DNA of 64,000 bases from IMGVR_UViG_3300023174_000038:124001-188000; one strand, 5' to 3'. Shown: positions 4,658-41,414, counted from the first letter of the stretch. Made by a program: numbers and translations. The notes: generated from the letters alone by a model not told the origin.

Positions 4658-4658
4658 A

Positions 4659-5646: not shown

Positions 5647-6681
5647 ATGGCAATAACTTTTTCAGGCGTAAATTTTAGTGGTGGATTTCAAATTCAACCA
5701 ACCTTTGCACCCGATGCACCAACAGTTGGTTCAGCTACAGCTACAGGAAGTACAACTGCAACGGTAGCATTCACTGCTCCAAGTTACGGTGGCTCTACAA
5801 CTATAACAACTTATACAGCAACAAGTAGTCCAGGTGGTATCACCGGTACATTAAGTCAAGCTGGTTCTGGAACAATTACTGTTTCTGGATTAACAGCAAG
5901 TACAAGCTATACATTTACGGTAACTGCTACAAATAGTAATGGTACAAGTGTAGCAAGTAGTGCAAGTAATAGTATTACAACTCAATCTGCTCTTATACCA
6001 ATTACATATTTGGTAGTTGGGCCAGGCGGCTCATCTGGAGGAACTGCATCACCATACGGCTCTACTGGCGGCGGCGGCGGTTCTGGTGGTGCAGTATTTG
6101 GTACTTCAAGTCTTACCGGAACACTAACAGCAACTGTAGGTACTTCTACGGGTCCTTATTATGTGCAAGGTACTAATAGTTCATTAGTTAGTACCGGCTT
6201 TACTAGAACTGCATATGCAGGAGGAAATGGTGGTCTGCGACAAGGCAATACTAATTCAGCAGGCTATGATGGGTATGCAGGTTTGGGGGGTGCTCAGGGA
6301 GATGGTAGTACTTCTGTAGGCGGGTCATTAGGAGCTGGTTCGCTATACGGGGCGGCAGGAACCGGCGGAAATGGAACATTTAGTGGCGGCGGAGGCGGAG
6401 GCGCCGGTGGCAATACGACCGGTGGTTACCCGAACGGTGGTGCAGGCGGTGCAGGCGGCCAACGAAATTGGACTGCATCATCTTGGAATAATATTGGTAG
6501 TACTTGGGGAGCAGGAAAAGCCGCAGGAACATCTGATACCGGCGGTACTCAAGGTATTGTTGCAATACAATATCCAGATACATACCCGGCTGCTACTTCA
6601 ACAACCGGTAGCCCATCAATAGTGGTGACGGGCGGATATAGAGTATATACATGGACTAGTAGTGGTTCAATAACGTTTTAA
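5647..6681 (+). CDS. Fibronectin type III plus glycine-rich virion protein
   Basis: APDAPT...VAFTAP...Y...VSGLTASTSYTFTVTATN FN3 signature followed by a Gly-rich domain. Confidence 0.75.
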   Translation: MAITFSGVNFSGGFQIQPTFAPDAPTVGSATATGSTTATVAFTAPSYGGSTTITTYTATSSPGGITGTLSQAGSGTITVSGLTASTSYTFTVTATNSNGTSVASSASNSITTQSALIPITYLVVGPGGSSGGTASPYGSTGGGGGSGGAVFGTSSLTGTLTATVGTSTGPYYVQGTNSSLVSTGFTRTAYAGGNGGLRQGNTNSAGYDGYAGLGGAQGDGSTSVGGSLGAGSLYGAAGTGGNGTFSGGGGGGAGGNTTGGYPNGGAGGAGGQRNWTASSWNNIGSTWGAGKAAGTSDTGGTQGIVAIQYPDTYPAATSTTGSPSIVVTGGYRVYTWTSSGSITF

Positions 6682-6698
6682 GGTAAATTATGGCAATA
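6661..6698 (+). repeat. 38-nt exact gene-junction repeat (second copy 7554..7591)
   Basis: AGTGGTTCAATAACGTTTTAAGGTAAATTATGGCAATA spans stop, RBS and start at both junctions. Confidence 0.85.
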
Positions 6699-7574
6699 AC
6701 TTTTTCAGGTGTAACAATAACAGGAGGATGGACTATCACTGGTACTGATGGTCCAGGAGTCACACCTACAGTTGAATATCTTGTAGTTGCTGGGGGCGGT
6801 GGCGGGGCACAACTGGGTGGTGGCGGCGGCGCCGGTGGTTATAGAACTGCTACAGGATTTGCAGTAACTGCAGGATCTCCTATTACTGTTACAATTGGTG
6901 CTGGTGGCGCCGGCTCAACCTCTCTATCTGTCAGTGGTGTAAATGGTCAAAATTCAGTGTTTTCTTCAATTACATCAGCCGGCGGAGGTGGTGGTGGTAA
7001 CCCCGTTACTTATAATGGTTCAACCGGTGGATCAGGTGGTGGTGGTGGCGGCCGCGACTCAGGTGGTGTAGGGGCACCGGGCTCCGGTACAGTCGGTCAA
7101 GGATATGCAGGTGGAAATTCTTATGCCGGCGGAACAGCTGGTGGAGGTGGCGGTGGCGCTGGCGCAGTAGGTTTAGCGGGTTCTGCGACTAGAGTGCCCG
7201 GCAACGGTGGTGCTGGTCTACAATCTTCTATATCAGGTACTGCTACATATTATGCAGGTGGAGGTGGTGGTGGTGGCAATCAAGCTATCCCAGCGACTGC
7301 ATCGGTTGGAGGAATAGGAGGCGGGGGATACGGTACAATCACGCCCGTGGCGGGAGGTAGCGGTGATACTAATAGTGGTGGTGGTGGTGGTGGCAGTGGA
7401 TCAAATGATGGAATTTCTTTTGCTACCGGTGGAGCCGGTGGTTCCGGTATTGTAATAATTCGCTATGCAGATACATATACAGCCGCAACAAGTACTACTG
7501 GTAGTCCAACAATAACTGTAGCCGGTGGATATAGAGTATATAAATATACGTCAAGTGGTTCAATAACGTTTTAA
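6690..7574 (+). CDS. Glycine-rich domain virion/tail protein
   Basis: Paralogue of 4659..5627 (VEYLVVAGGGGG, GGSGIVIIRY, near-identical C-terminus). Confidence 0.7.
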   Translation: MAITFSGVTITGGWTITGTDGPGVTPTVEYLVVAGGGGGAQLGGGGGAGGYRTATGFAVTAGSPITVTIGAGGAGSTSLSVSGVNGQNSVFSSITSAGGGGGGNPVTYNGSTGGSGGGGGGRDSGGVGAPGSGTVGQGYAGGNSYAGGTAGGGGGGAGAVGLAGSATRVPGNGGAGLQSSISGTATYYAGGGGGGGNQAIPATASVGGIGGGGYGTITPVAGGSGDTNSGGGGGGSGSNDGISFATGGAGGSGIVIIRYADTYTAATSTTGSPTITVAGGYRVYKYTSSGSITF

Positions 7575-7582
7575 GGTAAATT

Positions 7583-10363
7583 ATGGCAATATTAAGTGGG
7601 TTAACAATATCAGGCGGTGGAATAACTATTGTAGGCGGTCCTACGGCTGCCGCAAATGATCCATACTTTATGTACAATACATTATTGTTACCGGGCAATG
7701 GAACTAACGGTGCACAAAATAATACATTTACAGATGGTAGTACAAATAACTTTACTGTCACACGCTATGGTAATACTACTCAAGGTACATTCAGTCCGTA
7801 TGGTGGTAACTGGAGTAACTACTTTGATGGTACTGGCGATTATTTAACAACACCCTCGTCACTTGCAATGGCACTTGGATCAACATTTACAGTTGAATGT
7901 TGGATTTATGTTCTTGCATGGAATGTTAGTAGTCCAACTATTCTTGATGTTCGTGATTCAAATATTGTAGGTGCTATATATCTTGAAAATAACGGAACTG
8001 CAAGGATGCAAACAACAGGTACCGGTACTATAGCATCTCAAACCGGCATTACACTTAATACATGGATACATGTTGCTTTTGTAAGTGATGCAACTTCTTC
8101 TAGAGTTTATGTAAACGGATCAAACACAGGTGCAACAAATCAAGGTCAAGCATTATTCCCTACTACTGCTAAAGTTGGATTTATTGGCGCTGACTTTAGT
8201 GGTGGCTATGGTTTTAATGGGTACATTTCAAATATGCGTGTAGTTAAAGGTACAGCATTATATACTGCAAACTTTACTCCAAGCACAACACCATTAACCG
8301 CAATAGCAAACACAAGTTTATTGACTTGCCAATCTAATAGATTTATTGACAATAGTACTAATGCTTTTTCTATTACCGTAGTCGGTAATACTAACATACA
8401 ACGTTTCAGTCCATTCAGTCCATCATCATTAACCCCAACAAGTTATAGTGGTTATTTTGATGGTAATGGGGATTATTTAACTCCTACTGCTAGTTCTGAA
8501 TATGCATTTGCTACAGGTGATTTTACAGTTGAATGCTGGGTATATCTTCCTTCTGTTCCTGGAGGAGAAGTAGGTTTTGTTAGTACATTTAATACTGGTA
8601 GTGGACAAGGATTTATTCTAGGTACAGGTGGCGGTGGCAATGCTGGTAGATTACATATTGGTTTAGGAAATGGTACCGGTTCGGGTAACTTTGATTTGTA
8701 TGATTCTGTAAGTGTGGTAGCAAATACATGGATTCATGTTGCGGCAGTTCGTAGCTCGGGTACAGTAACTTTATATAAAAACGGTGTCTCAGTTGGTTCG
8801 GGTTCTGGAACAAATAATATTGAAAGAACTTTACTTGGTATTAGTATCTCATATCCTAATAGCCCTCAAGGTTATGTAACCGGTTATATTTCTAACGTGC
8901 GTATAGTTAAAGGTGTTGCTGTTTATACCGGAGCATTTACTGTACCCACAAGTCCATTAACAGCAACTCAAAGTAGTGGTACAAATATTGCCGCAATTAC
9001 AGGTACATCAACAAGTTTATTAACCTGTCAATCAACTACATTTATAGATAACAGTACAAACAACTTTACGATTACTGCTAACGGTGATACTAAACCAACA
9101 CAACAAAACCCATTCGGTTTTACTACTGCAACTACAAATGGTTACACAACAAGTACAATTGGCGGGTCAGGATACTTTGATGGTACAGGGGATTATTTAG
9201 TTACTCCTGCAAGTTCTGCGCTAGCACTAGCAACAAATGCGGCAGACTTTACTATGGAATGCTGGGTATATAATAATGGTGGTGCTGGTAGTCAATATGG
9301 TAGAGGAATTTCTATTTATTATCCTTCGGGAGGATATGGTTCTAATAGATTAATGTTTCGGTTAATAGCTGGAGGAGACAGATTAAATTTGTACCTGCTA
9401 GCTAATGGTAGTGCAGAGTTTGGCGGCCCCGGCGTTGATGGTACTGCTACAATAACTATTGGTGCATGGACGCATGTTGCCTTAGTAAGGAATACAGGCG
9501 TATTTTATGCATATGTAAATGGCGTATTAGACATTACCGTAAATTCGTCATCCGCTGCTTCAAGTATACCTTTCACTACTTTTAATACAATGGAGGTTGG
9601 TAGAACACAAGACGGCGCTAGCCCTGATTGGTTTGGTAATATTTCTAACTATCGTTTTGTTAAAGGTACAGCAGTCTATACTAGTAACTTTGTGCCACCA
9701 TCACAGTCAATAACAGCAGTAACAAATACAGCATTATTACTTGATATGACAAATGCCGGTATCATTGACAATGCAATGATGAACAACTTAGAAACAGTTG
9801 GTAATGCACAGATTTCTACTACACAAAGTAAGTTTGGTGGAAGTAGCATGTATTTTGATGGTACTGGTGACTGGTTAGTATCACCTGTCTCTACTAATTT
9901 AGGAATGGGAACTGGTGACTTTACAATTGAAGGATGGTTCTACGCAACAAGCCCAACTTATGCACAAGGCTTCTTTCATATCAATCAAACCGCTATAGGT
10001 GCAACTGTTGCGGGTTATGCAATTGGTGTAACAGCATCAGGTGCAATTCAATATTACGCTGGTAATACTTTTACAACTTCGTCATCTACTATAACTGCTA
10101 ACACATGGACACACTTAGCATTAGTTAGGTCGGCCGGTACTGTTAAGGTATATGTAAATGGAATCTTACCAGCTTCAGGCGGCTCAATAGCTGATTCACA
10201 AAATGTAACATCTGCGCTTGCATATCTAGGAGTGTTTTATACAGTATCCGGGGGTGTTGCATATACAATGACAGGATATATTGATGATTTCCGCATCACA
10301 AAAGGTTACGCACGTTATACTGCTAACTTTACTCCATCAACAACGGCATTCCCAACATATTAA
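7583..10363 (+). CDS. Concanavalin A-like/LamG multi-domain virion protein (4 domains)
   Basis: Four copies of YFDGxGDYL...FTxECW...WxHxAxV...GYISNxR LamG-type motifs. Confidence 0.8.
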   Translation: MAILSGLTISGGGITIVGGPTAAANDPYFMYNTLLLPGNGTNGAQNNTFTDGSTNNFTVTRYGNTTQGTFSPYGGNWSNYFDGTGDYLTTPSSLAMALGSTFTVECWIYVLAWNVSSPTILDVRDSNIVGAIYLENNGTARMQTTGTGTIASQTGITLNTWIHVAFVSDATSSRVYVNGSNTGATNQGQALFPTTAKVGFIGADFSGGYGFNGYISNMRVVKGTALYTANFTPSTTPLTAIANTSLLTCQSNRFIDNSTNAFSITVVGNTNIQRFSPFSPSSLTPTSYSGYFDGNGDYLTPTASSEYAFATGDFTVECWVYLPSVPGGEVGFVSTFNTGSGQGFILGTGGGGNAGRLHIGLGNGTGSGNFDLYDSVSVVANTWIHVAAVRSSGTVTLYKNGVSVGSGSGTNNIERTLLGISISYPNSPQGYVTGYISNVRIVKGVAVYTGAFTVPTSPLTATQSSGTNIAAITGTSTSLLTCQSTTFIDNSTNNFTITANGDTKPTQQNPFGFTTATTNGYTTSTIGGSGYFDGTGDYLVTPASSALALATNAADFTMECWVYNNGGAGSQYGRGISIYYPSGGYGSNRLMFRLIAGGDRLNLYLLANGSAEFGGPGVDGTATITIGAWTHVALVRNTGVFYAYVNGVLDITVNSSSAASSIPFTTFNTMEVGRTQDGASPDWFGNISNYRFVKGTAVYTSNFVPPSQSITAVTNTALLLDMTNAGIIDNAMMNNLETVGNAQISTTQSKFGGSSMYFDGTGDWLVSPVSTNLGMGTGDFTIEGWFYATSPTYAQGFFHINQTAIGATVAGYAIGVTASGAIQYYAGNTFTTSSSTITANTWTHLALVRSAGTVKVYVNGILPASGGSIADSQNVTSALAYLGVFYTVSGGVAYTMTGYIDDFRITKGYARYTANFTPSTTAFPTY

Positions 10364-10393: not shown

Positions 10394-10753
10394 ATGAGTC
10401 ATTTCGCACAAATAGATGAAAATAACATCGTAACACAAGTAATCGTAATAGAACAGGATGTAGTAGATACTGGTCTATTTGGTGATCCAAATAGCTGGAT
10501 TCAAACAAGCTACAACACCTCTGGTGGTGTACATACATTAGGTGGTACACCATTACGTAAAAATTATGCTGGTATAGGCTATACATATGATAGTATCAGA
10601 GATGCATTTATACCACCAAAACCATTCAACAGCTGGACATTAAATGAATCTAGCTGTTTGTGGGAAGCTCCTACACCAATGCCAACTGATGATAAAATGT
10701 ATCGTTGGGATGAGGAAACAACAAGTTGGATTGAAATTGCTATGCCTGAGTAA
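10394..10753 (+). CDS. Conserved phage protein typically adjacent to tail/fibre genes
   Basis: AAGGA RBS; MSHFAQID...RKNYAGIGYTYD...DAFIPPKP..SW...CLWEAP pattern. Confidence 0.6.
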   Translation: MSHFAQIDENNIVTQVIVIEQDVVDTGLFGDPNSWIQTSYNTSGGVHTLGGTPLRKNYAGIGYTYDSIRDAFIPPKPFNSWTLNESSCLWEAPTPMPTDDKMYRWDEETTSWIEIAMPE

Positions 10754-10832: not shown

Positions 10833-13800
10833 ATGGCAATTACAAAGTTACAACCGTTCAACCTAGATACAACTGCTAATTACACCTTTGCCAATATTAC
10901 CGCAACTAATGCTAATTTAGGCAATGCGGCTACTGCTAATTATTTCATTGGATCTGGCAATAATCTAAGTAATATTCAAGGTGCAAACGTTACAGGTGCT
11001 GTATCTAGTGCTACCACTTCCGGTACGGTAACAACTGCCGCCCAACCAAATATCACTAGTGTTGGGACATTATCTGGTGTAATAAGCACCGGAAATGTTA
11101 ATTTAACTAGTGCAAGTAACGTAGCATTGGGTCCTGTAGCTAATGTACATATCACCGGTGGTACTACAGGACAATATTTACAAACAGATGGATCAGGAAA
11201 TCTTTCATGGTCTACTGTCAGTAGTGGTGCCGCAAGTAATATCAGCAATGGAAACAGTAATGTAAATATTCCTTCAGCAAATGGCAACATCAATTTAACC
11301 GCTGTTGGTAATACAACTATGGTAATTACTGGTACTGGTGTTAATGTAGCCGGTACATTAAATGTTACAGGTAATACTACTGTAGGTAACTTAGTTACTA
11401 GTGGATCAGGTGGTACATTATCTAATATTAACGTTGTTTCTGCTAATACATTTACTGCATCAGGTAACATAACATCCGGTAATGCTAACTTAGGTAATAG
11501 TGTAACTGCTAACTACTTTACCGGTAACTTCTATGGAACAGCTAATTTAGCTACATATGCAACTACCGCTAATAGTGTTGCTGGCGGAAACGTTTCTGGA
11601 CAAGTAGCTAATGCATTGATATCAGGTACAGTATATACAAATGCACAACCCAATATCACATCAGTTGGTACACTAAGTAGTTTAGCAGTAACAGCTAATA
11701 TAACATCTGGAAACGCTAACTTAGGTAATAATGTAACAGCTAATTATTTTACTGGTAATGGTAGTCTGTTAACCGGTATTACAACGTCCGGCTTATCAAA
11801 TGGTAATAGTAATGTAAATATACCGGCTGCTAATGGTAATGTTAATATTAGTGCAGTTGGAAACGCCAACATATTAGTAGTAACTGGTACTGGTGTTAAT
11901 GTAGCCGGCACACTAAATGTAACTGGAAATGCTACAGTTGGTAATATCGTCACATCAGGTAGTGGCGGTAATGTATCTAATGTTAATGTTATATCAGCTA
12001 ATACATTTATTGCTAGTGGAAATATCACTGCTGGCAATGTTGTAACATCTGGTTCAGGTGGCAATATTAGTAATGCCAATGTTATTTCAGCTAATACATT
12101 TACTGCATCAGGTAATATAACTTCAGCCAATGCTAATTTAGGTAATGCAGTAATTGCTAATTTCTTTATAGGAAGTGGCAACAACTTAAGCAATATACAG
12201 GCTGCTAATGTATCCGGTCAAGTAAGTAATAGTTTGATATCTGGTACAGTATATACAAATGCACAACCAAACATTACATCAGTTGGAAGTCTAACTGGTT
12301 TAACTGTAAGCAATGCAACCGGCGTAGTTAATTTTACTACGACCGCTAACGTCACTTTAGGTGCTGTAGCTAATTTGCACATCAGTGGTGGTACTAGTGG
12401 GCAATACTTATCTACTGATGGATCAGGTACTCTTTCATGGGCTACAGTAAGCTCAGGTGCATCAAGTAATATCAGCAATGGAAATAGTAATGTAAATATT
12501 CCATCAGCTAATGGCAATGTTAATATCAGTGCAGTAGGTAACGCTAACATATTAGTAGTTACTGGTACAGGCGTTAATGTAGCCGGTACACTAAACGCTA
12601 CAGGAAATGCGTCATTAGGTAATTTAGTTACAACTGGTTCAGGTGGTAATATTAGTAATGCCAACGTTGTATCAGCTAATACATTTATTGCTAGTGGAAA
12701 TATCACTGCTGGCAATGTTGTAACATCTGGTTCAGGTGGTAATATTAGTAATGCAAACGTTATTAGTGCAAATACATTTACTGCATCTGGTAATATCACT
12801 AGTGGTAATGCTAACTTAGGTAATAGTGCAGTAGCTAATTATTTCACTGGTAATCTTTACGGGACAGCTAACTTAGCTACATATGCTACAACTGCAAATG
12901 CAGTAGCCGGTGGTAACGTTTCTGGTCAAGTGGCTAATGCATTAATATCGGGTACTGTGTATACAAATGCACAACCAAATATAACAAGTGTTGGTACATT
13001 GAGTAGTCTAGCAGTAACAGCTAATATTACTTCTGGTAATGCTAATTTAGGTAATTTAGTAACTGCAAATTACTTTACAGGAAATGGTAGTCTATTAACT
13101 GGTATTACAGTTAGTGCTGGTAATTCAATTGTAAATGGTAACAGTAATGTAAGTATACCGGCCGCAAATGGCAATGTTAATATATCGGCAGTTGGTAATG
13201 CCAATATTGTTGTAGTCACTGGCACGGGTGCTAACATCTCTGGTACACTAAACATTTCAGGTAACACGACTGTAAGTAACTTAATATCATCTGGATCAGG
13301 CGGTAATATTAGTAATGCAAACGTTGTATCAGCTAATACGTTTACAGCATCAGGTAACATAACTGCAGGTAATATCACAACTGGTGCAGGATCTGGCGGC
13401 AACATTACTGGTGCAAATGTAATATCAGCTAATACTTTTACTGCATCTGGTAATATTACAGGAGCTAATGCTAACTTAGGTAATAGTGTAACAGCCAATT
13501 ACTTCATTGGTAACTTCTATGGAACTGCCAACTCAGCAACCACTGCAGGTACAGTTACAACTGCGGCACAACCAAATATTACAAGTGTTGGTACATTAAC
13601 TGGAATAACAAGTACAGGCACTGTCAATTTAACTAGTGCAAGTAACGTATCATTAGGACCAGTCGGTAATGTAAAAATCACAGGTGGTACTACTGGTCAA
13701 TACTTATCAACAGATGGATCAGGAAATCTATCTTGGTCTACTGTTAGTAGTGGTTCATCAAGCAATATAAGTAATGGCAATAGTAATGTAAATATACCAT

Positions 13801-16800
13801 CAGCAAATGGCAATATCAACTTAACTGCAGTTGGAAATACAACTATGGTTGTTACTGGAACTGGGGTTAACGTAGCAGGTACATTAAATGTAACCGGTAA
13901 TGCTACAATTGGTAATATCACTACAGGTGCAGGATCTGGCGGCAATATCACTGGTGCTAATGTAATATCAGCTAATACTTTTACTGCATCTGGTAATATA
14001 ACTGGTGGTAACGCCAACTTAGGTAATAACGTATCTGCTAACTACTTCACTGGCAATCTCTATGGCACAGCTAATCTAGCTACATATGCAACAACAGCTA
14101 ACAGTGTAGCCGGTGCTAATGTATCTGGTCAAGTAGCTAATAGTTTAATATCTGGTACAGTATATACAAACGCACAACCAAACATAACTAGTGTCGGTAC
14201 ATTGAGTAGTTTAGCAGTAACAGCTAATATTACTTCCGGTAATGCTAATTTAGGAAATAACGTAACAGCTAACTATTTTACAGGAAATGGTAGTTTATTA
14301 ACTGGTATTACAGTTAGTGCTGGTAATACTATAGTTAATGGGAATAGTAATGTATTAGTATCTGCAAACGGAAACGTAACTACTAGTGTTGCAGGTAATG
14401 CTAATATACTAATTGTAACTGGCACTGGTGTTAATGTAGCCGGTACGTTAAATGTTACAGGTAATGCGACTGTTGGCAACATTGTTACGTCTGGATCAGG
14501 GGGTAACGTATCTAATGTTAATGTTATATCAGCTAACACATTCATTGCATCCGGTAATCTTACAGCAGGTAACATCAATACAACTGGTTCAGGAGGTAAT
14601 ATTGGTAATGCCAATGTCATCTCAGCTAATACATTTACTGCATCCGGCAATATAACAGCAGGCAATGCTAACTTGGGTAATAGTGCAGTAGCTAATTATT
14701 TTACTGGTAACTTTTATGGAACAGCTAACTTAGCAACTTATGCAACTACTGCTAATAGTGTTGCCGGCGGTAATGTATCCGGACAAGTAGCTAATGCATT
14801 GATATCAGGCACTGTATATACAAATGCACAACCAAATATCACTAGTGTTGGAAGTTTAACTGGCTTAACTGTAAGTAACGCATCAGGTGTGGTTAATTTT
14901 ATAACTACTTCCAATGTATCATTGGGTGCTGTAGGCAATGTAAAAATTACAGGTGGTACTACTGGTCAATATTTATCTACTGATGGATCTGGTAATCTCT
15001 CATGGTCTACTGTAAGTAGTGGGTCAACCAGTAACATCAGCAATGGAAATAGTAATGTAAATATACCGGCTGCTAATGGCAATGTAAACATAAGCGCAGT
15101 TGGTAATGCAAACATACTAGTAGTAACAGGCACCGGGGTTAATGTAGCAGGTACATTAAATGTAACCGGTAACGCTACTGTGGGTAATATTGTCACGTCT
15201 GGTTCTGGTGGTAATGTATCTAACGTTAACGTCATATCCGCGAATACATTTATTGCTAGTGGCAACTTAACTGCGGGTAATATCAATACAACAGGTAGTG
15301 GTGGTAACATTGGTAATGCTAACGTTATCTCAGCAAACACATTCACAGCAAGTGGCAACATAACTTCTGCCAATGCTAATTTAGGTAATAGCGCAGTAGC
15401 TAATTACTTTACTGGTAACTTCTATGGAACAGCTAACTTGGCAACATATGCAACTACTGCTAATAGTGTTGCAGGTGCTAACGTTTCTGGACAAGTAGCT
15501 AATGCATTGATATCAGGTACTGTATACACAAATGCACAACCCAATATTACAAGTGTTGGCACCTTAACAGGTATAACAAGTACCGGTACTGCTAATTTAA
15601 CCGGTGCAAGTAACGTAGCATTAGGTCCAGTTGCCAATGTACATATTACCGGAGGTACATCAGGTCAATATCTATCAACAGATGGATCTGGTACATTATC
15701 ATGGTCTACTGTAAGTTCTGGCGCCGCAAGTAATATCAGCAACGGAAATAGTAATGTAAACATACCAGCCGCAAATGGAAATGTTAATATTAGTGCAGTG
15801 GGCAACGCCAACATATTAGTTGTAACAGGCACTGGTGTTAACGTAGCCGGCACATTAAATACAACAGGTAATACTACAGTTGGTAATCTATTCAGTAGTG
15901 GTAGTGGTGGTAACATATCCAACGTTAATGTTATATCAGCTAACACCTTTACTGCTAGTGGTAATATAACAGCAGGTAATGTGGTAACATCTGGCTCTGG
16001 TGGTAACATTAGCAACGCAAACGTTATATCAGCTAATACATTTACCGCATCCGGTAACATCACATCTTCTAATGCTAATTTAGGTAATGCAGCCACAGCT
16101 AATTTCTTTATTGGATCTGGTAACAACTTAAGTAACATACAAGCCGCCAATATATCCGGACAAGTAGCTAATAGTTTAATAGCCGGGACAGTCTATACAA
16201 ATGCACAACCTAACATAACAAGTGTTGGTTCATTGACTGGCTTAACAGTAAGTAATGCAACAGGTGTTGTAAATCTTACAACTACTGCAAACGTAACTCT
16301 CGGAGCCGTAGCTAATTTACATATTAGTGGTGGTACCTCAGGTCAATACTTATCAACGGATGGATCTGGTACATTATCTTGGTCTACAGTTTCTAGCGGC
16401 TCAACAAGTAATATCAGCAATGGAAATAGTAATGTAAATATACCAGCTGCAAATGGTAACGTTAATATATCTAGTGCTGGTAATGCAAACATATTAATTG
16501 TAACTGGCACTGGCGTTAATGTAGCAGGAACATTAAACACAACAGGTAATACAACTGTTGGTAATCTATTCAGTAGTGGTAGTGGTGGTAACATTAGCAA
16601 TGTCAATGTTATATCAGCTAACACCTTTACTGCAAGCGGTAACATAACTGCTGGCAATGTTGTAACATCTGGTTCAGGTGGTAATATTAGTAATGCAAAC
16701 GTTATTAGTGCAAATACATTTAGTGCATCTGGTAACATTACTTCGGGTAATGCTAACTTAGGTAATAGCGCAATTGCTAACTACTTCACTGGTAACTTCT

Positions 16801-31717: not shown

Positions 31718-31718
31718 T

Positions 31719-32564: not shown

Positions 32565-32597
32565 TATTGATAAATATACTAAAGAGAGAGAGATATT

Positions 32598-33569
32598 ATG
32601 CCAGTAACGATAACAGCGGGAATTACATTTAGTGGGGGTGGATTGACTATGGCCTTTGCACCACCCTCAGGACCAACAGCAGGTTGGTTTGGTAGCGGGA
32701 TAACTTCGGGGGTAACGGTATCATTAGTAAATAGAATAACATATGCAATTGATACGGCGACAGCTAGTGTGCGCGGTCCGCTAAGTTTAGGGAGAAAAGG
32801 ATTAGTTGCTACCGGTAATCTTGATTATGGTTGGTTTGGTGGAGGTACTATAGCAGCTGGTAGTGGCGTTCTTGTAACTCTAGTTGATCGCATTATATAT
32901 GCGACAGATACCGCTACTGCAGGCGTTCGCGGCCCATTAAGTACAGCTAGAGGATATTTAGGCGCAACAGGTAATACAACTGATGGTTGGTTTGGGGGAG
33001 GTGCTGCCACCTCCCCCTTCGTATATTATTCAACTGTAGACCGCATCACTTATGCAACTGATACTGCAACAGCAACTACACGTGGACCGTTGAGTTCAGC
33101 AAGAGTCAATGTGATTGCAACGGGCAATACAACTAATGGATGGTGGGCAGGCGGCTACGCAGGTAGCCCAACTCCCGCAGGATTCCGGTCTACTATAGAT
33201 CGTGTAACATTTTCAACTGACACTGCAACCGCTAGTGTTCGTGGTCCATTAAATAATACAAATGGGAGAATGGCTGCAACCGGTACTCCAACTGACGGAT
33301 GGTTTGGCGGCGGCTATAGAGGCTCTATCGTAGAACGAGTAACATTTTCAACAGATACGGCGACAGCTAGTGTTCGCGGTCCGTTAAGTTCAGGAAGAAG
33401 CTATTTGGCGGCATCAACCGATAGTACAACATATGGTTGGTTTGGTGGCGGTGGATCAATTTCTACAGTAGACCGAATAACATATGCTACAGACACTGCA
33501 ACTGCAACTGCACGTGGACCGTTGAGTTCAGCAAGAAGCTACTTGGCAGCAACCTCAGGTGTCCAATAA
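32598..33569 (+). CDS. Kelch-like six-repeat beta-propeller virion protein, paralogue 1
   Basis: Six ~50-aa repeats GWFGGG...VDRITYATDTATASVRGPLS.AR. Confidence 0.65.
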   Translation: MPVTITAGITFSGGGLTMAFAPPSGPTAGWFGSGITSGVTVSLVNRITYAIDTATASVRGPLSLGRKGLVATGNLDYGWFGGGTIAAGSGVLVTLVDRIIYATDTATAGVRGPLSTARGYLGATGNTTDGWFGGGAATSPFVYYSTVDRITYATDTATATTRGPLSSARVNVIATGNTTNGWWAGGYAGSPTPAGFRSTIDRVTFSTDTATASVRGPLNNTNGRMAATGTPTDGWFGGGYRGSIVERVTFSTDTATASVRGPLSSGRSYLAASTDSTTYGWFGGGGSISTVDRITYATDTATATARGPLSSARSYLAATSGVQ

Positions 33570-33584: not shown

Positions 33585-34598
33585 ATGCCAGTAACAATAA
33601 CAGGTGGAGTAACAATTACAGGGACCGGTGTCACAATGTTTGGTCCAGCCCCGGGCCCGGCTCCAGTATCTACAGCAGGATGGTTTGGTGGTGGATATGC
33701 TCCTGGAGCAGGTCCTGGAGCAGGAAACTATTCTACAGTAACTAGACTTACTTTTGCAACAGATACCGCAACAGCTACAGTTCGTGGACCATTAAGTTTG
33801 GCTAGATATGGATTCGCTGGATCAGGTACTTCAACTAATGGCTGGTTTAGTGGTGGACAAACATCTACATTAGAATCAACTATTGACCGTATAACTTATT
33901 CAAATGATACAGCTACTGCAAGTGTACGTGGACCATTAAGTTCAGCTAGAAGATATGCTTCTTCGGTAAGTGATAACTCAACTTATAGTTGGGTTAGCGG
34001 AGGAATAGATATATCTTTACCGAGCGTATATTCATCACAGGTAGCTCGCATAATTTATGCCACAGATACTGCTACTACAACTAACCGAGGACCATTAAGT
34101 ATAGCTAGATATGCAATTACTAGTATTGGTACTACTCAATATGGATGGAATATGGCAGGATATGAGGTGAATGGGTTTGTATCTACAGTTGACCGTATAA
34201 CTTATTCAAATGACACAGCTACAGCAAGTGTACGTGGTCCATTAACCGGTGGCAAATATAAAGCATCAACATTAACTGATAGTACTACATATGGTTGGTA
34301 TGCAGGTGGAACTAGCGGCTTCCCACTTTCAATAGTTAACCGTATCACATATGCAACAGATACAACTACCGCAAGTACACGAGGTTTTTTATCTGTGCCA
34401 AGAAGTAACTCAGCTGGCGTATATGACAATACAGCTGGGTGGGTTGGAGCTGGCCTAGCCAATGGCGGACCTCTTCCTACAGTATTATCATCAAGTATTG
34501 ATAGAATAATTTATGCTACTGATACCGCTACTGCAACCTCTAGAGGTTCAGTAGGCACAGCTAGAGCATATCCCGGCAGTTCATCTGGCGTACAATAA
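33585..34598 (+). CDS. Kelch-like six-repeat beta-propeller virion protein, paralogue 2
   Basis: Same repeat; ends SSGVQ. Confidence 0.65.
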   Translation: MPVTITGGVTITGTGVTMFGPAPGPAPVSTAGWFGGGYAPGAGPGAGNYSTVTRLTFATDTATATVRGPLSLARYGFAGSGTSTNGWFSGGQTSTLESTIDRITYSNDTATASVRGPLSSARRYASSVSDNSTYSWVSGGIDISLPSVYSSQVARIIYATDTATTTNRGPLSIARYAITSIGTTQYGWNMAGYEVNGFVSTVDRITYSNDTATASVRGPLTGGKYKASTLTDSTTYGWYAGGTSGFPLSIVNRITYATDTTTASTRGFLSVPRSNSAGVYDNTAGWVGAGLANGGPLPTVLSSSIDRIIYATDTATATSRGSVGTARAYPGSSSGVQ

Positions 34599-36419: not shown

Positions 36420-37123
36420 AAAACAATTTATTAACTAACATATTAATTGCACCCAATGTAATATCAAAAGAGGGTGTAGCTTTTATTATGGAGCATGCCA
36501 AGAGTCAACGAAAAGAAGATTTATCTGTATTTGATCCAGAACAAAGTAACAAAAGTGGCAACACCAAATTTAGTGTAGACAAGAAGGTTAGAGATACACA
36601 GATGATTGACCTAGAAGATATTGCTAGTGAGATTATTGATTTGTTTCGTAATGTTGTAACCAATGTTATTAATCCATTTTATGAGTTTGAGGTTAAAGAT
36701 TCTGAGTTGCCACAACTATTACATTATGGTGTAGATGGGCATTATATGCCGCATTGTGATGGTGAGTCACTATGGAAGCCACCTGGTAATGAGCCATTGA
36801 TTTGGCGTAAGAGTACTGATAGAGATTTAAGTACAGTATTGTTTTTGAATGATGATTTTGAAGGTGGGGATTTTGTATTCCCTGAATTAAAAGTAAGAGT
36901 TCGCCCAGAGCCGGGTATGTTAGTTTGTTTCCCTTCTACACATGAGTATTTGCATGGAGTTGAGCCAGTTACTAAAGGAACTAGATATAGTATTGTAAAT
37001 TGGATGACAGTTAAGGGTTTTCCAAGTATGGCAGACGAAACTAATATGATTAATCATAAATACAATATAGGTATTGATAAGCCTATATCTAATAAAAAGG
37101 AAAAAACATGGCTAAGTACATAA
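36416..37123 (+). CDS. Prolyl 4-hydroxylase-like 2OG-Fe(II) oxygenase
   Basis: HYMPHCD, LFLNDDFEGG, FPS...HGVEPVTKGTRYS. Confidence 0.85.
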   Translation: MKNNLLTNILIAPNVISKEGVAFIMEHAKSQRKEDLSVFDPEQSNKSGNTKFSVDKKVRDTQMIDLEDIASEIIDLFRNVVTNVINPFYEFEVKDSELPQLLHYGVDGHYMPHCDGESLWKPPGNEPLIWRKSTDRDLSTVLFLNDDFEGGDFVFPELKVRVRPEPGMLVCFPSTHEYLHGVEPVTKGTRYSIVNWMTVKGFPSMADETNMINHKYNIGIDKPISNKKEKTWLST

Positions 37124-37521
37124 AGCATTATTACGTAGATGGTGAGAATTTAGTAGAGTTCTTTGTTGATAAGAACATGGGACCAAACGGTAAGACACAT
37201 CCAAGAATTGACGGATTAGATGTTAAGTTTTGGTTTGTAGACACTAATGGTATTGATTACTGTATGAGTGTAGTACCAGATGAGACTGTTATTACTCCAG
37301 AAAATGGCTTGGGTGAGGGTACATATGAGCAGTGGTCCAATGAAATTGCTGGTCAATTTGAGTCACAGAGAGCAAGTGTAGCTAGCAATAGTGATATGTT
37401 GACACGATTGAGTAAGACTGAAGCTGAAGTATTAGCTATGGCTTTTGACAATAGTAGTGTTGAGTCAATGTTAGCTAGTTTTGCACAATTAGCACCCACT
37501 CCAGAAGTATTAGGCAGTTGA
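37108..37521 (+). CDS. Hypothetical protein
   Basis: AAGGA RBS; 137-aa ORF overlapping the upstream stop. Confidence 0.6.
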   Translation: MAKYIKHYYVDGENLVEFFVDKNMGPNGKTHPRIDGLDVKFWFVDTNGIDYCMSVVPDETVITPENGLGEGTYEQWSNEIAGQFESQRASVASNSDMLTRLSKTEAEVLAMAFDNSSVESMLASFAQLAPTPEVLGS

Positions 37522-37542
37522 TCCTTAAGCCATATTAGAAGT

Positions 37543-37550
37543 TATAAATA
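37543..37550 (+). promoter_or_regulatory. T4-type late promoter
   Basis: Intergenic TATAAATA upstream of Kelch-like paralogues 3-6. Confidence 0.65.
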
Positions 37551-37583
37551 GTGTGATAAATACACTATGATAAAGGTAAATAT

Positions 37584-38537: not shown

Positions 38538-38558
38538 TAGAAAGAATAATATATGTCA
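38531..38558 (+). repeat. 28-nt exact gene-junction repeat (second copy 40451..40478; partial copy 33564..33580)
   Basis: ACAATAATAGAAAGAATAATATATGTCA spans the stop and start of Kelch-like genes. Confidence 0.85.
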
Positions 38559-39494
38559 GTAACATTTAGTGGTGGAATAACATTTACAGGTGGAGGGTTT
38601 AGTTTCACTGCCGCACCTCCGGTTGGTGCTACAGCTGGTTGGTTTGGTGGTGGTATACCAACGTATAGCACAGTACAACGTATGACATTTGCAACAGATA
38701 CTAGTGCTACTAGTATACGAGGCCCACTTAGTTCCGGCAGATACGGTCTATCGGGTGCCGGTACTCTCACAAATGGTTGGTTTGGCGGCGGCGCCACACC
38801 CGCATTATTATCAACAGTAGACCGAGTAACATATGCAACTGACACAGCAACTGCTAGTGTACGTGGTCCATTAACTGTTGCAAGAATGCAACTAGGAGCA
38901 TCAACTGATAGTACTACTTACGGTTGGTTTGGTGCGGGATATCTTGGATATCCGACTACTCTATCTACAGTAGACCGAATAACATATGCCACTGATACAG
39001 CAACAGCAATTAGTCGAGGGCCGGTACATCAGGCACTTGGGGTAGCGGCTACGGGTACAACTGCATATGGTTGGTTTGGTGGAGGTTATAAATACCCTAC
39101 TGGAAGCATGTCAACCATAAGCCGTATTGATTATTCAAGTGATGCATCAACTGCTAGTGTGCGCGGCCCATTAAGTGTGGCAAGGTTCCTGACCGGGGCT
39201 ACAGGTAATGATACTAATGGCTGGTTTGCTGGTGGGCAAGGTACCGTTGTAGATAGAATTACATATGCAACAGATACTGCAACAGCTAGTGTGCGTGGAC
39301 CATTAAATAGTCCGACACGTGAAGGTATAGCTGGTGTTGGTAATACTACAAACGGTTGGTTTGCCGGTGGCTTTAATACTAGTACTATAAACCGTATTAC
39401 ATATGCAACTGATACTGCGACGGCAAGCCTAACCGGTACTTTAAGTGAATACTTTCAAATTACAAAAGTCGGCGGCACCTCCGGTCAACAATAA
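38553..39494 (+). CDS. Kelch-like beta-propeller virion protein, paralogue 4
   Basis: Six GWFGG/ATDTATASVRGPL repeats. Confidence 0.65.
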   Translation: MSVTFSGGITFTGGGFSFTAAPPVGATAGWFGGGIPTYSTVQRMTFATDTSATSIRGPLSSGRYGLSGAGTLTNGWFGGGATPALLSTVDRVTYATDTATASVRGPLTVARMQLGASTDSTTYGWFGAGYLGYPTTLSTVDRITYATDTATAISRGPVHQALGVAATGTTAYGWFGGGYKYPTGSMSTISRIDYSSDASTASVRGPLSVARFLTGATGNDTNGWFAGGQGTVVDRITYATDTATASVRGPLNSPTREGIAGVGNTTNGWFAGGFNTSTINRITYATDTATASLTGTLSEYFQITKVGGTSGQQ

Positions 39495-39512
39495 CATAAA
39501 GGTTTAAAAAGA

Positions 39513-40457
39513 ATGAGTATAACAATAACTGGCGGATTTACAATGGCAGGCGGTGGATTTACACTGGTAGCTGCACCTCCATCTGATCCTACTGCTAGTT
39601 GGGTTGCCGGCGGAGTAGCTAGTGGAGTTGATATATCTACTGTGCAACGTATCACCTATGCAACAGATACAGCTACTGCAACTATACGTGGTTCATTAAA
39701 TTTAGCAAGAGATAGATTTGCGGCAACAGGTAATACAACTGATGGTTGGTTTGGCGGCGGAGCTTACCCTGCAAATTCTACAATACAACGAATAACATAC
39801 GCAACAGATACCGCAACAGCATCAGTGCGTGGCCCCTTAAGTTCAGCTAGATATAATTTGGGAGCAAGCGGTAATACAACTAATGGTTGGTTTGGCGGCG
39901 GTACTGATTACCCCGGAGTTTCTACAGTAGACCGTGTCACTTACTCAACAGATACAATAACCGCAAGTATACGTGGTCCATTAAGTTTGGCCCGCATTAC
40001 CCCGGCTGCAGCCGGTAATACAACTGATGGTTGGTTTGGTGGAGGAGCAACTGGAGCAACAGTGGTGTCAACAGTAGATCGCATTACATACGCTACAGAT
40101 ACAGCAACAGCAAGTGTACGTGGTCCACTAAGTTTAGCCCGCAAACAGGCTGCAGCCGCAGGTAATACAACGTACGGATGGTATGCTGGTGGCTATGCCG
40201 GCGGCTCGGTTGGTGGACTAGTGGATCGTATAACATATGCAACAGATACCGCAACCGCATCGGTACGTGGGCCGGTATATGATTCTTATCAAATAGCAGC
40301 ATCTGGAAATTCAACGTACGGATGGTTTGCTGGCGGTAGTGGTGACCTATCAACAGTACAACGTATCACTTATTCAAATGATACTGTTGCGGCAACTCCG
40401 CGTGGTCCATTAAGTGTAGGCGCCACAGGACAAGCGGCTGCATCAGGCGTACAATAA
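39513..40457 (+). CDS. Kelch-like beta-propeller virion protein, paralogue 5
   Basis: Six GWFGG/ATDTATASVRGPL repeats. Confidence 0.65.
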   Translation: MSITITGGFTMAGGGFTLVAAPPSDPTASWVAGGVASGVDISTVQRITYATDTATATIRGSLNLARDRFAATGNTTDGWFGGGAYPANSTIQRITYATDTATASVRGPLSSARYNLGASGNTTNGWFGGGTDYPGVSTVDRVTYSTDTITASIRGPLSLARITPAAAGNTTDGWFGGGATGATVVSTVDRITYATDTATASVRGPLSLARKQAAAAGNTTYGWYAGGYAGGSVGGLVDRITYATDTATASVRGPVYDSYQIAASGNSTYGWFAGGSGDLSTVQRITYSNDTVAATPRGPLSVGATGQAAASGVQ

Positions 40458-40472
40458 TAGAAAGAATAATAT

Positions 40473-41414
40473 ATGTCAATAACAATAACAACGGGTGGAA
40501 TAACAATGACTGGTGGAGGTGTAAGCTTTAGTGCCGCACCACCCTCCACACCAACAGCCAGTTGGGTAGCCGGCGGAGGAAATATATTATCAACGGTAGA
40601 TCGTATTACATATGCTACTGATACTGCTACTGCAAGTGTGCGTGGCCCTCTTAGTTGGGCAACTAACAAACAGGCAGCTACTGGTAATTTGACTTATGGT
40701 TGGTGGGCCGGCGGATTTGATGGTGTTGCTCCTACTGATTTTGCAAGTACAGTACAACGAATTACATATGCCACAGATACTGCTGCCTCAAGTATTCGCG
40801 GTCCAATAAATTCAGAAAAAACTATGTTGGCTGCTGCAGGAACCACAGATTATGGATGGTTTGCCGGTGGAGCTTTGTATGTACAAACAGAACAATCAAC
40901 AGTAGATCGTATAACATATGCAACTGATACAGCAACTGCATCATTACGTGGTACAATAAGTTTAGCTAGATACTATTTGGGCGGAACATCAGATGGTAGT
41001 ACGTATGGATGGTTTGGTGGTGGTTATGCACCTTATAGAAGTAGGGTGGATCGTATAACATATGCAACAGATACAGCAACTGCTAGTGTACGTGGTCCAT
41101 TAAATATATCTATAATAATACCGGCAGCAACAGGTAATACAACTAATGGTTGGTGGGGAGGCGGATATGCTTCCGGTGCTTCAACAGCAGTATATCGTGT
41201 AACTTATGCAACCGATACAAATACAGCAAGTGTTCGTGGACCATTAAGTCAATCTGTGGGTACTGCATCAGGAAACTTGTCTTATGGTTGGTTTATGGGT
41301 GCTATTAACGTAGATAGAATTGATTATTCAAATGATACTGCTACTGCAAGTTTGCGTGGACAACTAGCAACAAATAGATCTACTTATGGTGCATCAGCTT
41401 CGGGTGTACAATAA
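40473..41414 (+). CDS. Kelch-like beta-propeller virion protein, paralogue 6
   Basis: Six GWFGG/ATDTATASVRGPL repeats. Confidence 0.65.
   Translation: MSITITTGGITMTGGGVSFSAAPPSTPTASWVAGGGNILSTVDRITYATDTATASVRGPLSWATNKQAATGNLTYGWWAGGFDGVAPTDFASTVQRITYATDTAASSIRGPINSEKTMLAAAGTTDYGWFAGGALYVQTEQSTVDRITYATDTATASLRGTISLARYYLGGTSDGSTYGWFGGGYAPYRSRVDRITYATDTATASVRGPLNISIIIPAATGNTTNGWWGGGYASGASTAVYRVTYATDTNTASVRGPLSQSVGTASGNLSYGWFMGAINVDRIDYSNDTATASLRGQLATNRSTYGASASGVQ

What the first reader, a model, noticed from the sequence alone, without database searches (positions are those of the whole stretch)
5647..41414. Nine different virion proteins share an N-terminal ~20-aa docking-like peptide
Seen: MAITFSGVNFSGGFQIQP (FN3/Gly), MAITFSGVTITGGWTITG (Gly), MAILSGLTISGGGITIVGGP (LamG), and in the Kelch-like set MPVTITAGITFSGGGLTM, MPVTITGGVTITGTGVTM, MAIEIGPGWTIGGGITV, MSVTFSGGITFTGGGFSF, MSITITGGFTMAGGGFTL, MSITITTGGITMTGGGVSF. 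Most are followed by a Pro-containing linker. The pattern is three short beta-strands with Gly turns preceding unrelated head domains. Inference: a universal plug (beta-helix rungs) that lets interchangeable adhesin heads assemble together or attach to repeated sites on the giant fibres or capsid, giving a combinatorial display system.
Basis: partly seen in the sequence, partly recalled or inferred. Interest (0 to 1): 0.62.

Follow-up and report, generated by a model that had tools for sequence, protein, structure and literature searches.

The report
Swappable N-terminal tag on phage adhesin-like proteins
A giant uncultivated T4-like phage puts the same short, uncharged N-terminal peptide on 13 proteins with three kinds of binding domain, most likely as an attachment tag like the docking peptides of other phages' receptor-binding proteins, but binding has not been shown.

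Summary
The motif is real. All nine window ORFs start with it. The 348.7-kb phage genome holds 13 clear copies, every one at Met1, and composition does not explain it (real 21-35 bits, shuffles at most 7.8).

There are three head classes, not nine: a six-bladed Kelch propeller (six window paralogues), a TNF-like/glycine-rich adhesin domain (two, one with FN3) and 4x LamG (one).

The tag is an independent module.
- It is unstructured in both AF2 models.
- The same heads occur elsewhere with other N-terminal modules.
- Identical 18-aa tags sit on heads only 26-78% identical.

At least ten tag subtypes coexist per genome. Each is nearly frozen at the DNA level across phages (91% identical codons, against 51% in the heads).

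Virion location is inferred, not shown. The evidence is late-promoter-like motifs, fold matches of the glycine-rich head to the Pam3 fibre and Bxb1 tail tip, and a parallel in phage CBB. There, nine small proteins, five annotated with LamG or Kelch domains, share a different N-terminal peptide, and seven are annotated structural proteins.

The closest known kind is the conserved N-terminal docking peptide of secondary receptor-binding proteins. No partner was found, and the one complex prediction gave no answer. I call this a new variant of a known kind.

The parts
5647..6681 (+). Tagged protein, 344 aa: tag (about residues 1-18), Pro linker, FN3, then the C-terminal end of a glycine-rich domain
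   Evidence: PF00041, 1.2e-7; the C-terminal 42 aa are 79% identical to ORF 6690-7574. Tag HMM 24.2 bits at Met1.
6690..7574 (+). Tagged protein, 294 aa: tag, linker, then a TNF-like/glycine-rich adhesin-type domain
   Evidence: PF21722 2.7e-21. AF2 pLDDT 92, with the tag at pLDDT about 51. Foldseek matches the Bxb1 tail tip and the Pam3 fibre.
7583..10363 (+). Tagged protein, 926 aa: a divergent tag, then four LamG (Laminin_G_3) domains
   Evidence: PF13385 8.3e-70 in 4 stretches. PHROG matches are annotated virion structural protein or baseplate wedge. Tag HMM 16.8-27 bits. The same head carries another tag subtype in a 524-kb phage.
32598..33569 (+). Tagged Kelch-like six-bladed propeller paralogue, 323 aa; first gene of a tandem pair
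   Evidence: phrog_19111 2.7e-33. Tag HMM 26.8 bits.
33585..34598 (+). Tagged Kelch-like propeller paralogue, 337 aa
37584..38537 (+). Tagged Kelch-like propeller paralogue, 317 aa; first gene of a tandem run of four
38553..39494 (+). Tagged Kelch-like propeller paralogue, 313 aa; the one that was modelled
   Evidence: AF2 pLDDT 89.8. Residues 1-27 are coil at pLDDT 71-76 and the propeller starts at residue 28. Foldseek matches KLHL12/Keap1 Kelch domains at about 1e-15. At least 945 homologues in metagenomes.
39513..40457 (+). Tagged Kelch-like propeller paralogue, 314 aa
40473..41414 (+). Tagged Kelch-like propeller paralogue, 313 aa
4659..5627 (+). Glycine-rich-domain paralogue with a different N-terminal module ('type B', about 40 aa, ending G-x-W-P). 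It shows that the same head takes alternative N-modules.
   Evidence: PF21722 8.9e-26. 64% identical to ORF 6690 over the start of the domain. The same type-B module sits on Kelch-like heads in metagenomes. It is the only type-B protein in the genome.
32569..32576 (+). GATAAATA, a T4-late-promoter-like motif 22-29 nt upstream of the first tagged Kelch gene
   Evidence: The same motif at the same distance precedes many structural-looking genes and the other tagged clusters.
37555..37562 (+). GATAAATA, a late-promoter-like motif upstream of the four-gene tagged run
10833..25805 (+). Context: a 4,990-aa N/G/T/S-rich fibrous protein with a 236-aa repeat. It is a candidate carrier of attached heads, which is untested.
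   Evidence: autocorrelation peak at lag 236. No PHROG match. No tag-like segment inside it.

Best explanation
The peptide is about 18 residues long, uncharged, and patterned like three short beta-strands joined by two Gly-Gly turns. I read it as a self-contained N-terminal attachment tag. A short Pro-containing linker joins it to a binding head, which is a Kelch propeller, a TNF-like/glycine-rich adhesin domain or a LamG array. The tag is disordered on its own. It most likely becomes ordered by adding its strands to a partner on the virion: a fibre, the baseplate or another structural protein. In that way it would hold many different heads on one particle.

The genes are late genes of a T4-like jumbo phage. 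The tag comes in at least ten discrete subtypes per genome. The boundary between tag and head is also where heads are exchanged between loci and between phages.

Shown: the motif, its strict N-terminal position, its modularity, the folds of the heads, and the DNA-level conservation. Inferred: virion location, docking, and the identity of the partner.
For: 1. Position. The tag is strictly N-terminal, in 13 proteins, and is not explained by composition.

2. Heads. Three unrelated head classes carry it in this genome. A 524-kb phage has 16 tagged proteins with propeller, glycine-rich, LamG and FN3 heads.

3. Alternative N-modules. The same heads occur with other N-modules. Of the 120 best Kelch-like homologues, 85 carry this tag, 6 carry type B and at least 5 carry type C. 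The S-SKS1 copy carries type C. Glycine-rich heads carry types A, B, C or D, or long fibre N-termini.

4. Decoupling. 18/18-identical tags sit on heads only 26-78% identical. The best-matching heads carry other tags.

5. Not part of the fold. The tag is coil at pLDDT 71-76 in the Kelch model and about 51 in the glycine-rich model, while both bodies exceed 90.

6. Head function. The glycine-rich head matches the Bxb1 tail tip and the Pam3 fibre gp24. [quoted passage not shown]

7. Timing. GATAAATA lies 23-34 nt upstream of the first gene of each tagged cluster, as it does before many structural-looking genes.

8. Parallel in a cultured phage. This genome's MCP is nearest to PA5oct-type jumbo phages. 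In Pectobacterium phage CBB, described as Rak2-like, nine small proteins all start with one shared, different 12-aa peptide. Two are annotated LamG and three Kelch. Seven are annotated structural proteins, and the paper names several as found by mass spectrometry (PMC5259590).

9. Precedent. Conserved N-terminal peptides of 7-29 aa are the docking elements of secondary receptor-binding proteins. Deleting one abolishes incorporation, and fusing it to a foreign head restores it (PMC6872550, PMC13352976).

10. Distribution. It hit one contig in 185,579 prokaryote genomes, and that contig also carries a tagged propeller.
Against: - There is no direct evidence that any tagged protein is in a virion, and no partner was identified.
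- The T4 gp9/gp10 N-terminal family, taken here as the nearest Pfam stand-in for the known socket for such peptides, gives only a sub-threshold match (20.2 bits against a cut-off of 25).
- The homotrimer prediction of residues 1-30 gave no answer.
- Several tagged genes sit among replication and transcription genes (DNA polymerase B, PP-loop ATPase, a sigma-70 region 4 protein), not in a structural block.
- Cultured relatives by capsid protein (Vibrio phage 2.275.O, PA5oct, Phosso) have no such tag.
- Synonymous sites inside the tag are far too conserved for protein-level selection alone. Some of the conservation therefore has another cause.
- In CBB about half of the shared peptides contain an L/M/I-x-E motif. 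They could be capsid-targeting or cleavage signals rather than external docking peptides.
Confidence: 0.55

Rival explanations
1. The conserved unit is mainly a DNA or mRNA cassette. On this view the first ~60 nt of these genes is kept for efficient translation initiation of abundant late proteins. Alternatively, or in addition, it serves as a short homology handle at which heads are exchanged by recombination. The peptide would be tolerated rather than functional.
For: - Codons inside identical tags are identical in 481 of 526 cases (91%). For identical residues in the heads of the same gene pairs the figure is 2,425 of 4,737 (51%).
- In 60-nt windows the tag is 93-100% identical, while both flanks are 43-85%.
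- Heads are exchanged at this boundary.
- The -30..+60 RNA segments fold no better than shuffles, with z from 0.03 to +2.3. That fits selection for an open initiation region.
Against: - Between subtypes within one genome the codons differ as much as in the heads (59% same codon). The amino-acid pattern is nevertheless kept: Met, hydrophobic/hydroxyl alternation, two Gly-Gly turns, then Pro. That is protein-level selection.
- A pure recombination handle should be homogenised within a genome. Instead at least ten subtypes persist side by side.
- Alternative N-modules of quite different sequence occupy the same position on the same heads.
- The two readings do not exclude each other.
Confidence: 0.17
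2. The tag is a sorting signal for packaging into the capsid or for export, comparable to the capsid-targeting sequence of the T4 internal proteins. The heads would then act inside the host after injection.
For: - T4-like phages are known, from general knowledge of T4, to use a short shared N-terminal sequence to load unrelated proteins into the prohead.
- Kelch propellers are protein-binding modules.
- Some tagged genes lie outside structural modules.
- The CBB peptides often contain L/M/I-x-E.
Against: - The tags lack the Glu-containing cleavage motif, with 1 Glu in 234 residues. This phage's own capsid protein N-terminus does carry L-L-E-G motifs.
- There is no positively charged n-region, no hydrophobic core and no Cys, so it is not a Sec, Tat or lipoprotein signal.
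- LamG and glycine-rich adhesin heads are external receptor-binding domains in solved phages (PMC9608196).
- Three tagged genes lie between giant fibre genes.
Confidence: 0.1
3. The tag is a leader that recruits the neighbouring modification enzymes to these proteins. Those enzymes are a sulfotransferase, a GT1 glycosyltransferase, a 2OG-Fe(II) oxygenase, a DUF6445 protein and an APS-kinase-like protein.
For: - These enzymes are interleaved with the Kelch-like genes.
- The sulfotransferase and the oxygenase flank a Kelch-like gene in Synechococcus phage S-SKS1 too, at 37% and 48% identity.
- A Pro-rich linker follows the tag.
Against: - In S-SKS1 the same enzyme neighbourhood goes with a head that carries a different N-module, type C. 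The link is therefore to the head, not to this tag.
- The tagged genes at 5647-10363 and those elsewhere in the genome have no such neighbours.
Confidence: 0.06
4. There is nothing beyond paralogy or chance. The shared start would merely reflect recent duplication of one gene family or its Gly/Thr/Ile-rich composition.
For: - Six of the nine window proteins, and ten of the thirteen in the genome, are paralogues of one propeller superfamily.
- Two more share a glycine-rich domain.
Against: - The tag is also on LamG and glycine-rich proteins that have no detectable similarity to the propellers.
- Shuffles and the bodies of the proteins do not score.
- Tag and head histories are decoupled.
Confidence: 0.02

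Closest known systems
Conserved N-terminal docking peptides of secondary receptor-binding proteins (Klebsiella phages KP32, K11, KP34, the Menlow and PhiK64-1/RaK2 groups; K1E/K1-5/SP6)
   Same: Both are short N-terminal peptides (7-29 aa in those phages), conserved while the rest of the protein varies. Both sit in front of interchangeable receptor-binding heads, with several such proteins per phage. In KP32, deleting the peptide prevents incorporation and fusing it to a foreign head gives incorporation (PMC6872550, PMC13352976).
   Different: - I did not compare the sequences.
- Here the heads are monomer-type binding domains (Kelch, LamG, TNF-like/glycine-rich) rather than trimeric depolymerase spikes.
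- There are 13-16 tagged proteins per genome, in at least ten subtypes.
- No T4 gp10-like socket was confirmed.
- Nothing has been tested experimentally.
The shared-N-terminus family of Pectobacterium jumbo phage vB_PcaM_CBB (CBB_536, 537, 548-554)
   Same: CBB is described as a Rak2-like jumbo phage, a group related to this genome's nearest capsid relatives. It has small tandem genes, two annotated with LamG and three with Kelch domains. All begin with one shared peptide of about 12 aa. Seven of the nine are annotated structural proteins, and the paper names several as found by mass spectrometry (PMC5259590).
   Different: - The peptide sequence is quite different. It is charged, starts Met-Leu-Pro-Phe, and often contains an L/M/I-x-E motif.
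- CBB's Kelch proteins are not detectable homologues of the ones here.
- I found no mention of the shared peptide in the passages of the CBB paper that I read. A search for 'MLPF' together with 'phage' found nothing relevant.
Pam3 gp24 tail fibre and T-even/S16 gp38 adhesins
   Same: The distal TNF-like plus glycine-rich domain is used for receptor recognition, and a separate N-terminal element attaches it to the baseplate or fibre tip (PMC9608196). Foldseek matches ORF 6690-7574 to Pam3 gp24 and to the Bxb1 tail tip.
   Different: - Their attachment element is alpha-helical and trimerises. Here it is an 18-aa Gly/Thr/Ile peptide with no predicted structure on its own.
- The TM-scores are low (0.35-0.47), although Foldseek gives probability 1.00.
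T4 capsid-targeting sequence of the internal proteins
   Same: It is a short N-terminal sequence shared by unrelated proteins of a T4-like phage, and it directs them to one place in the particle (my own knowledge of T4).
   Different: The T4 signal ends in a Glu-containing site cut by the prohead protease. The tags here have essentially no Glu, and their heads look external.

Membership tests
Conserved N-terminal docking peptide of phage receptor-binding proteins (functional class) | A short N-terminal peptide that is conserved while the remainder of the protein diverges or is replaced | tested here: met
   Tags are 18/18 identical on heads 26-78% identical. Three head classes carry the tag.
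Conserved N-terminal docking peptide of phage receptor-binding proteins (functional class) | A cognate socket in the same phage, such as the T4 gp10-like branching domain of a primary receptor-binding protein | tested here: inconclusive
   PF07880 (T4 gp9/gp10 N-terminal family), used as the nearest Pfam stand-in for that socket, gives 20.2 bits against a cut-off of 25 at genome 17508-17678(-), and 9.3 bits at 316847-317113(-).
Conserved N-terminal docking peptide of phage receptor-binding proteins (functional class) | The peptide is required and sufficient for incorporation of the head into the virion | not testable with these tools
   The phage is uncultivated. The only complex prediction (three copies of residues 1-30) gave no answer.
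Conserved N-terminal docking peptide of phage receptor-binding proteins (functional class) | The proteins are virion components | tested here: inconclusive
   The evidence is indirect only: late-promoter-like motifs, fold matches to fibre and tail-tip proteins, PHROG annotations of the LamG matches, and the CBB parallel.
T4-type capsid-targeting sequence or prohead-protease propeptide | An N-terminal signal ending in an L/I-x-E cleavage site | tested here: not met
   One Glu in 234 tag residues, and none in a (L/I)-x-E arrangement.
Sec, Tat or lipoprotein signal peptide | A positively charged n-region, a continuous hydrophobic core, and an A-x-A site or lipobox Cys | tested here: not met
   There is no K or R and no Cys, and Gly-Gly turns interrupt every hydrophobic run.
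Kelch-type six-bladed beta-propeller (head of six window proteins) | Six four-stranded blades that form a closed propeller | tested here: met
   Six repeats of about 48 aa. AF2 pLDDT 89.8. Foldseek matches KLHL12, Keap1 and designed six-blade Kelch proteins at E about 1e-15 to 1e-16, TM 0.75-0.86. No Pfam Kelch model matches.
Glycine-rich adhesin domain (Pfam PF21722 Gly_rich_2; Pam3 gp24 / ALK-type TNF-like plus glycine-rich fold) | A Pfam match over the cut-off, and a fold match to solved glycine-rich receptor-binding domains | tested here: met
   77 and 91.7 bits against a cut-off of 24.3. Foldseek matches 9d93 chains Qa/Qb, 7ypx_A and ALK/LTK glycine-rich domains. The TM-scores are low.
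   Only about three six-residue units are present. AF2 predicts coil. No Pfam hexapeptide match. There is no similarity to the repeats of the giant fibres.

The most novel reading that the evidence does not exclude
The tags form an address code. Ten or more discrete subtypes, each almost frozen at the nucleotide level across a lineage of uncultivated giant phages, would each direct a different binding head to its own site on the particle. The same 60-nt element would also be the recombination joint at which heads are swapped between loci and between phages. Together this would be a natural, genome-wide plug-and-display system on a scale not described for any phage (13-16 tagged heads per virion).
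Probability: 0.2. Interest if true: 0.75.

Novelty: new variant of a known kind. Interest (0 to 1): 0.55.

Why it matters
Phage host range is set by how receptor-binding heads are mounted on the particle. Short docking peptides are already used to engineer host range in Klebsiella phages. An 18-residue, uncharged tag that nature has placed on at least three unrelated binding folds would extend that principle in three ways:
- to giant phages of uncultivated aquatic hosts;
- to monomeric lectin-like heads;
- to a scale of 13-16 copies and at least ten subtypes per genome.

It would also give a compact handle for display or engineering once its socket is known.

The near-frozen codons of the tag are a separate, testable puzzle about how modular phage genes exchange parts.

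The parallel family in phage CBB offers a cultured system in which the general idea can be tested now. That family's shared peptide is not mentioned in the passages of the CBB paper that I read.

Tried and rejected
- Complex prediction, three copies of residues 1-30 of ORF 38553 with alignment A1: score 0.02 against a mark of 0.42, controls not run. Verdict 'no answer', so it is evidence neither way.
- The protein-atlas search on residues 1-24: no usable feature hit, and the structural rows are meaningless for a 20-residue coil.
- Tag profile against PDB sequences: only chance matches at E about 5, to a loop of photosystem II CP47.
- megablast of the region and tblastn of the glycine-rich protein against cultured phages: no match. 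The second is probably lost to the low-complexity filter.
- Tag profile against Vibrio phage 2.275.O, PA5oct, Phosso and S-SKS1: no match.
- PHROG scan of the three giant fibrous proteins and ORF 4274-4657: no match.
- RNA structure around the start codons: no excess folding, z from 0.03 to +2.3.
- I first took the identical 20 nt upstream of ORFs 6690 and 7583 for a shared regulatory cassette. It is the conserved 3' end of the preceding glycine-rich paralogues plus a short spacer.
- 'Velcro' strand of the propeller: rejected. The tag is outside the fold in the model and also sits on non-propeller heads.
- Literature searches for the CBB peptide and for PF21722 found nothing relevant.
- The large profile search (search of protein representatives) and the third word search were not used. 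An 18-residue profile cannot reach significance against billions of proteins, and the virome DNA-pattern scans answered the question.

Full report
WHAT THE GENOME IS

The window is bases 124001-188000 of a single 348,701-bp IMG/VR virus record with 36% GC, which CheckV rates 100% complete. It encodes a T4-type major capsid protein (PF07068, 329 bits) and a large terminase. The nearest cultured capsid proteins are those of Sinorhizobium phage Phosso (73%), Vibrio phage 2.275.O (71%) and Pseudomonas phage PA5oct (68%). It is therefore an uncultivated jumbo myovirus related to PA5oct-type jumbo phages.

THE OBSERVATION

A profile of the nine was run against all stop-to-stop frames of the genome. 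It finds 13 clear matches, every one beginning at the initiator Met, and then the E-value jumps from about 0.01 to 2.4. A 13-sequence profile gives the same set. Four copies lie outside the window, on the minus strand, ending at genome 283001, 284972, 321121 and 331591.

Composition does not explain the motif. Real tags score 20.8-35.4 bits. The same proteins without residues 1-25 score at most 1.9 bits. 2,600 shuffles score at most 7.8 bits.

The tag has no charged residue apart from a single Glu, and no Cys, His or Tyr. Hydrophobic residues alternate with Thr/Ser, two Gly-Gly turns interrupt them, and a Pro-containing stretch follows.

WHAT THE HEADS ARE

There are three head classes, not nine different proteins.

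1. Kelch-type propeller. Six window proteins, plus three elsewhere in the genome, are paralogues with six repeats of about 48 aa. AF2 gives a six-bladed propeller at pLDDT 89.8, and Foldseek matches KLHL12, Keap1 and designed Kelch proteins at about 1e-15. A tenth protein (284040-284972) belongs to a divergent branch of the same repeat superfamily (hhalign probability 95%).

2. Glycine-rich domain. ORFs 6690 and 5647 carry Pfam PF21722, and 5647 has an FN3 domain inserted. The AF2 model (pLDDT 92) matches the Bxb1 tail tip, the Pam3 fibre gp24 and ALK/LTK glycine-rich domains. The TM-scores are low.

3. LamG. ORF 7583 has four Laminin_G_3 domains.

ORF 4659 is a further glycine-rich paralogue with a quite different N-terminal module of about 40 aa.

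THE TAG IS AN INDEPENDENT MODULE

- In both models the tag is unstructured, at pLDDT 71-76 and about 51, while the bodies exceed 90.
- Of the 120 best homologues of the Kelch-like protein, 85 carry this tag, 6 carry the ORF-4659-type module and at least 5 carry a third type. The copy in Synechococcus phage S-SKS1 carries the third type.
- Glycine-rich heads occur with four short N-module types or at the end of long fibres.
Each match is a Met at most 22 codons downstream of an in-frame stop, so each sits at or near the start of its open frame. The heads behind them are propellers of both branches, glycine-rich domains and an FN3. Two patterns for other subtypes found syntenic glycine-rich and LamG genes.
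- The same pattern hit a single contig in 185,579 prokaryote genomes, and that contig also carries a tagged propeller.
- A 524-kb phage record has 16 tagged ORFs. One class is a LamG head close to that of ORF 7583 but with another tag subtype.

SUBTYPES AND DNA-LEVEL CONSERVATION (NEW)

The 13 tags of this genome are 13 different subtypes. Several recur in other phages with 18/18 identical residues on heads that are only 26-78% identical. The closest heads to a given window paralogue often carry a different tag.

In such pairs the codons of the tag are identical in 481 of 526 positions (91%). For identical residues in the heads the figure is 2,425 of 4,737 (51%). The pairs are not independent of one another.

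In 60-nt windows the tag is 93-100% identical, while the sequence on both sides is 43-85% identical. Between subtypes within the genome the same-codon fraction is 59%.

So the subtypes are old, but each is almost frozen at the nucleotide level. RNA folding of -30..+60 shows no structure, and if anything less than shuffles. I cannot decide between a synonymous constraint on the initiation region and repeated short-patch exchange. Either way, the tag-head joint is where genes are recombined.

The effect is weaker for the 5647, 6690 and 7583 tags.

ARE THEY VIRION PROTEINS?

This is not shown. The indirect support is as follows.

- GATAAATA resembles the T4 late promoter TATAAATA (my knowledge of T4). 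It lies 23-34 nt upstream of the first gene of each tagged cluster and of many structural-looking genes.
- The glycine-rich head matches fibre and tail-tip proteins. In Pam3 gp24 the N-terminal domain docks to the baseplate and the distal domains bind the receptor (PMC9608196).
- The PHROG families matched by the LamG protein are annotated as virion or baseplate proteins.
- Three tagged genes lie between giant fibrous genes. One of these is 4,990 aa long with a 236-aa repeat.
- In the jumbo phage CBB, CBB_536, 537 and 548-554 are small proteins that all begin with one shared 12-aa peptide. Two are annotated with LamG and three with Kelch domains. Seven are annotated structural proteins, and the paper names several as found by mass spectrometry (PMC5259590). 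I found no mention of the shared peptide in the passages I read.

Against: tagged genes at genome 282-285 kb sit between a sigma-70 region 4 protein, a PP-loop ATPase and DNA polymerase B, and this arrangement is conserved in many related contigs. Cultured relatives by capsid protein lack the tag.

MECHANISM

The best-supported reading is an attachment tag. It is disordered alone and is placed before a Pro linker and a binding head. It would become ordered on a virion partner, and it comes in several subtypes.

The known class it resembles is the conserved N-terminal docking peptide of secondary receptor-binding proteins. Those peptides are 7-29 aa. Deleting one abolishes incorporation, and fusing it to a foreign head restores it (PMC6872550, PMC13352976).

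Membership in that functional class is only partly tested. Conservation with variable heads is met. A gp10-like socket is inconclusive. Binding is untestable here, and the one complex prediction gave no answer.

A T4-type capsid-targeting signal and Sec-type signals fail their defining features. A leader for the neighbouring sulfotransferase, glycosyltransferase and oxygenase genes is unlikely, because that neighbourhood goes with the head and not the tag.

VERDICT

This is a new variant of a known kind. The two items most worth following up are the unexplained nucleotide-level freezing of the tag and the untested parallel in CBB.

Noticed in passing
window 29953-32564, 34602-37521, 41469-42260; L001 (S-SKS1) 3512-6654: The Kelch-like genes are interleaved with a sulfotransferase, a DUF6445 protein, a GT1 glycosyltransferase, a 2OG-Fe(II) oxygenase and an APS-kinase-like protein. 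In Synechococcus siphovirus S-SKS1 the sulfotransferase (37% identical) and the oxygenase (48%) flank a Kelch-like gene too. This suggests a conserved link between these propellers and a sulfation or hydroxylation/glycosylation pathway.
   Followed up: partly
L001 4343-6225 (S-SKS1 record HQ633071, about 201.8-203.7 kb): The S-SKS1 Kelch-like gene is annotated as a 168-aa protein. It continues for about 450 more residues of the same repeat in another frame, after a run of six A at about L001 4840. This may be a frameshift, a sequencing error or slippage. The downstream part is unannotated.
   Followed up: partly
L092 19369-30465 (Pectobacterium phage CBB, KU574722, CBB_536, 537, 548-554): Nine small proteins share one N-terminal peptide of about 12 aa that starts Met-Leu-Pro-Phe. 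Two are annotated with LamG and three with Kelch domains. Seven are annotated structural proteins. About half of the peptides contain an L/M/I-x-E motif like a T4 prohead-protease site. I found no mention of the shared peptide in the passages of the CBB paper that I read.
   Followed up: partly
window 4659-5627, and metagenomic proteins P0002, P0005, P0147, P0180 and others: A second family of N-terminal modules ends in a G-x-W-P motif. It comes in a long form, a short form with only the W-x-L...G-x-W-P half, and a short form with only the R-Y-x-G-G half. It is found on Kelch-like, FN3 and glycine-rich heads in many metagenomic proteins and in S-SKS1, and its function is unknown.
   Followed up: partly
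genome 281974-282027 (-) and 215747-216286 (-), both outside the window: There is a weak internal tag-like match (E 5.6e-4) in a 94-aa open frame just downstream of the tagged gene 282063-283001. It may be a remnant. There is also a 179-aa ORF with a divergent tag-like start and a GATAAATA motif 23 nt upstream.
   Followed up: no
window 10833-25805 and 1-4284: Two giant N/G/T/S-rich proteins (4,990 aa, and more than 1,427 aa running off the window start) are built on a 236-aa repeat. They have no PHROG match.
   Followed up: partly
window 42735-48656: From their translated N-termini, the ORFs here look like a ribonucleotide-reductase-like gene followed by GIY-YIG-like and HNH-like homing-endonuclease ORFs. 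This is by eye only and no family scan was run.
   Followed up: no
window 10394-10753: A 119-aa ORF between the LamG protein and the giant fibre matches phrog_7759 (1.2e-37), a phage family of unknown function.
   Followed up: no
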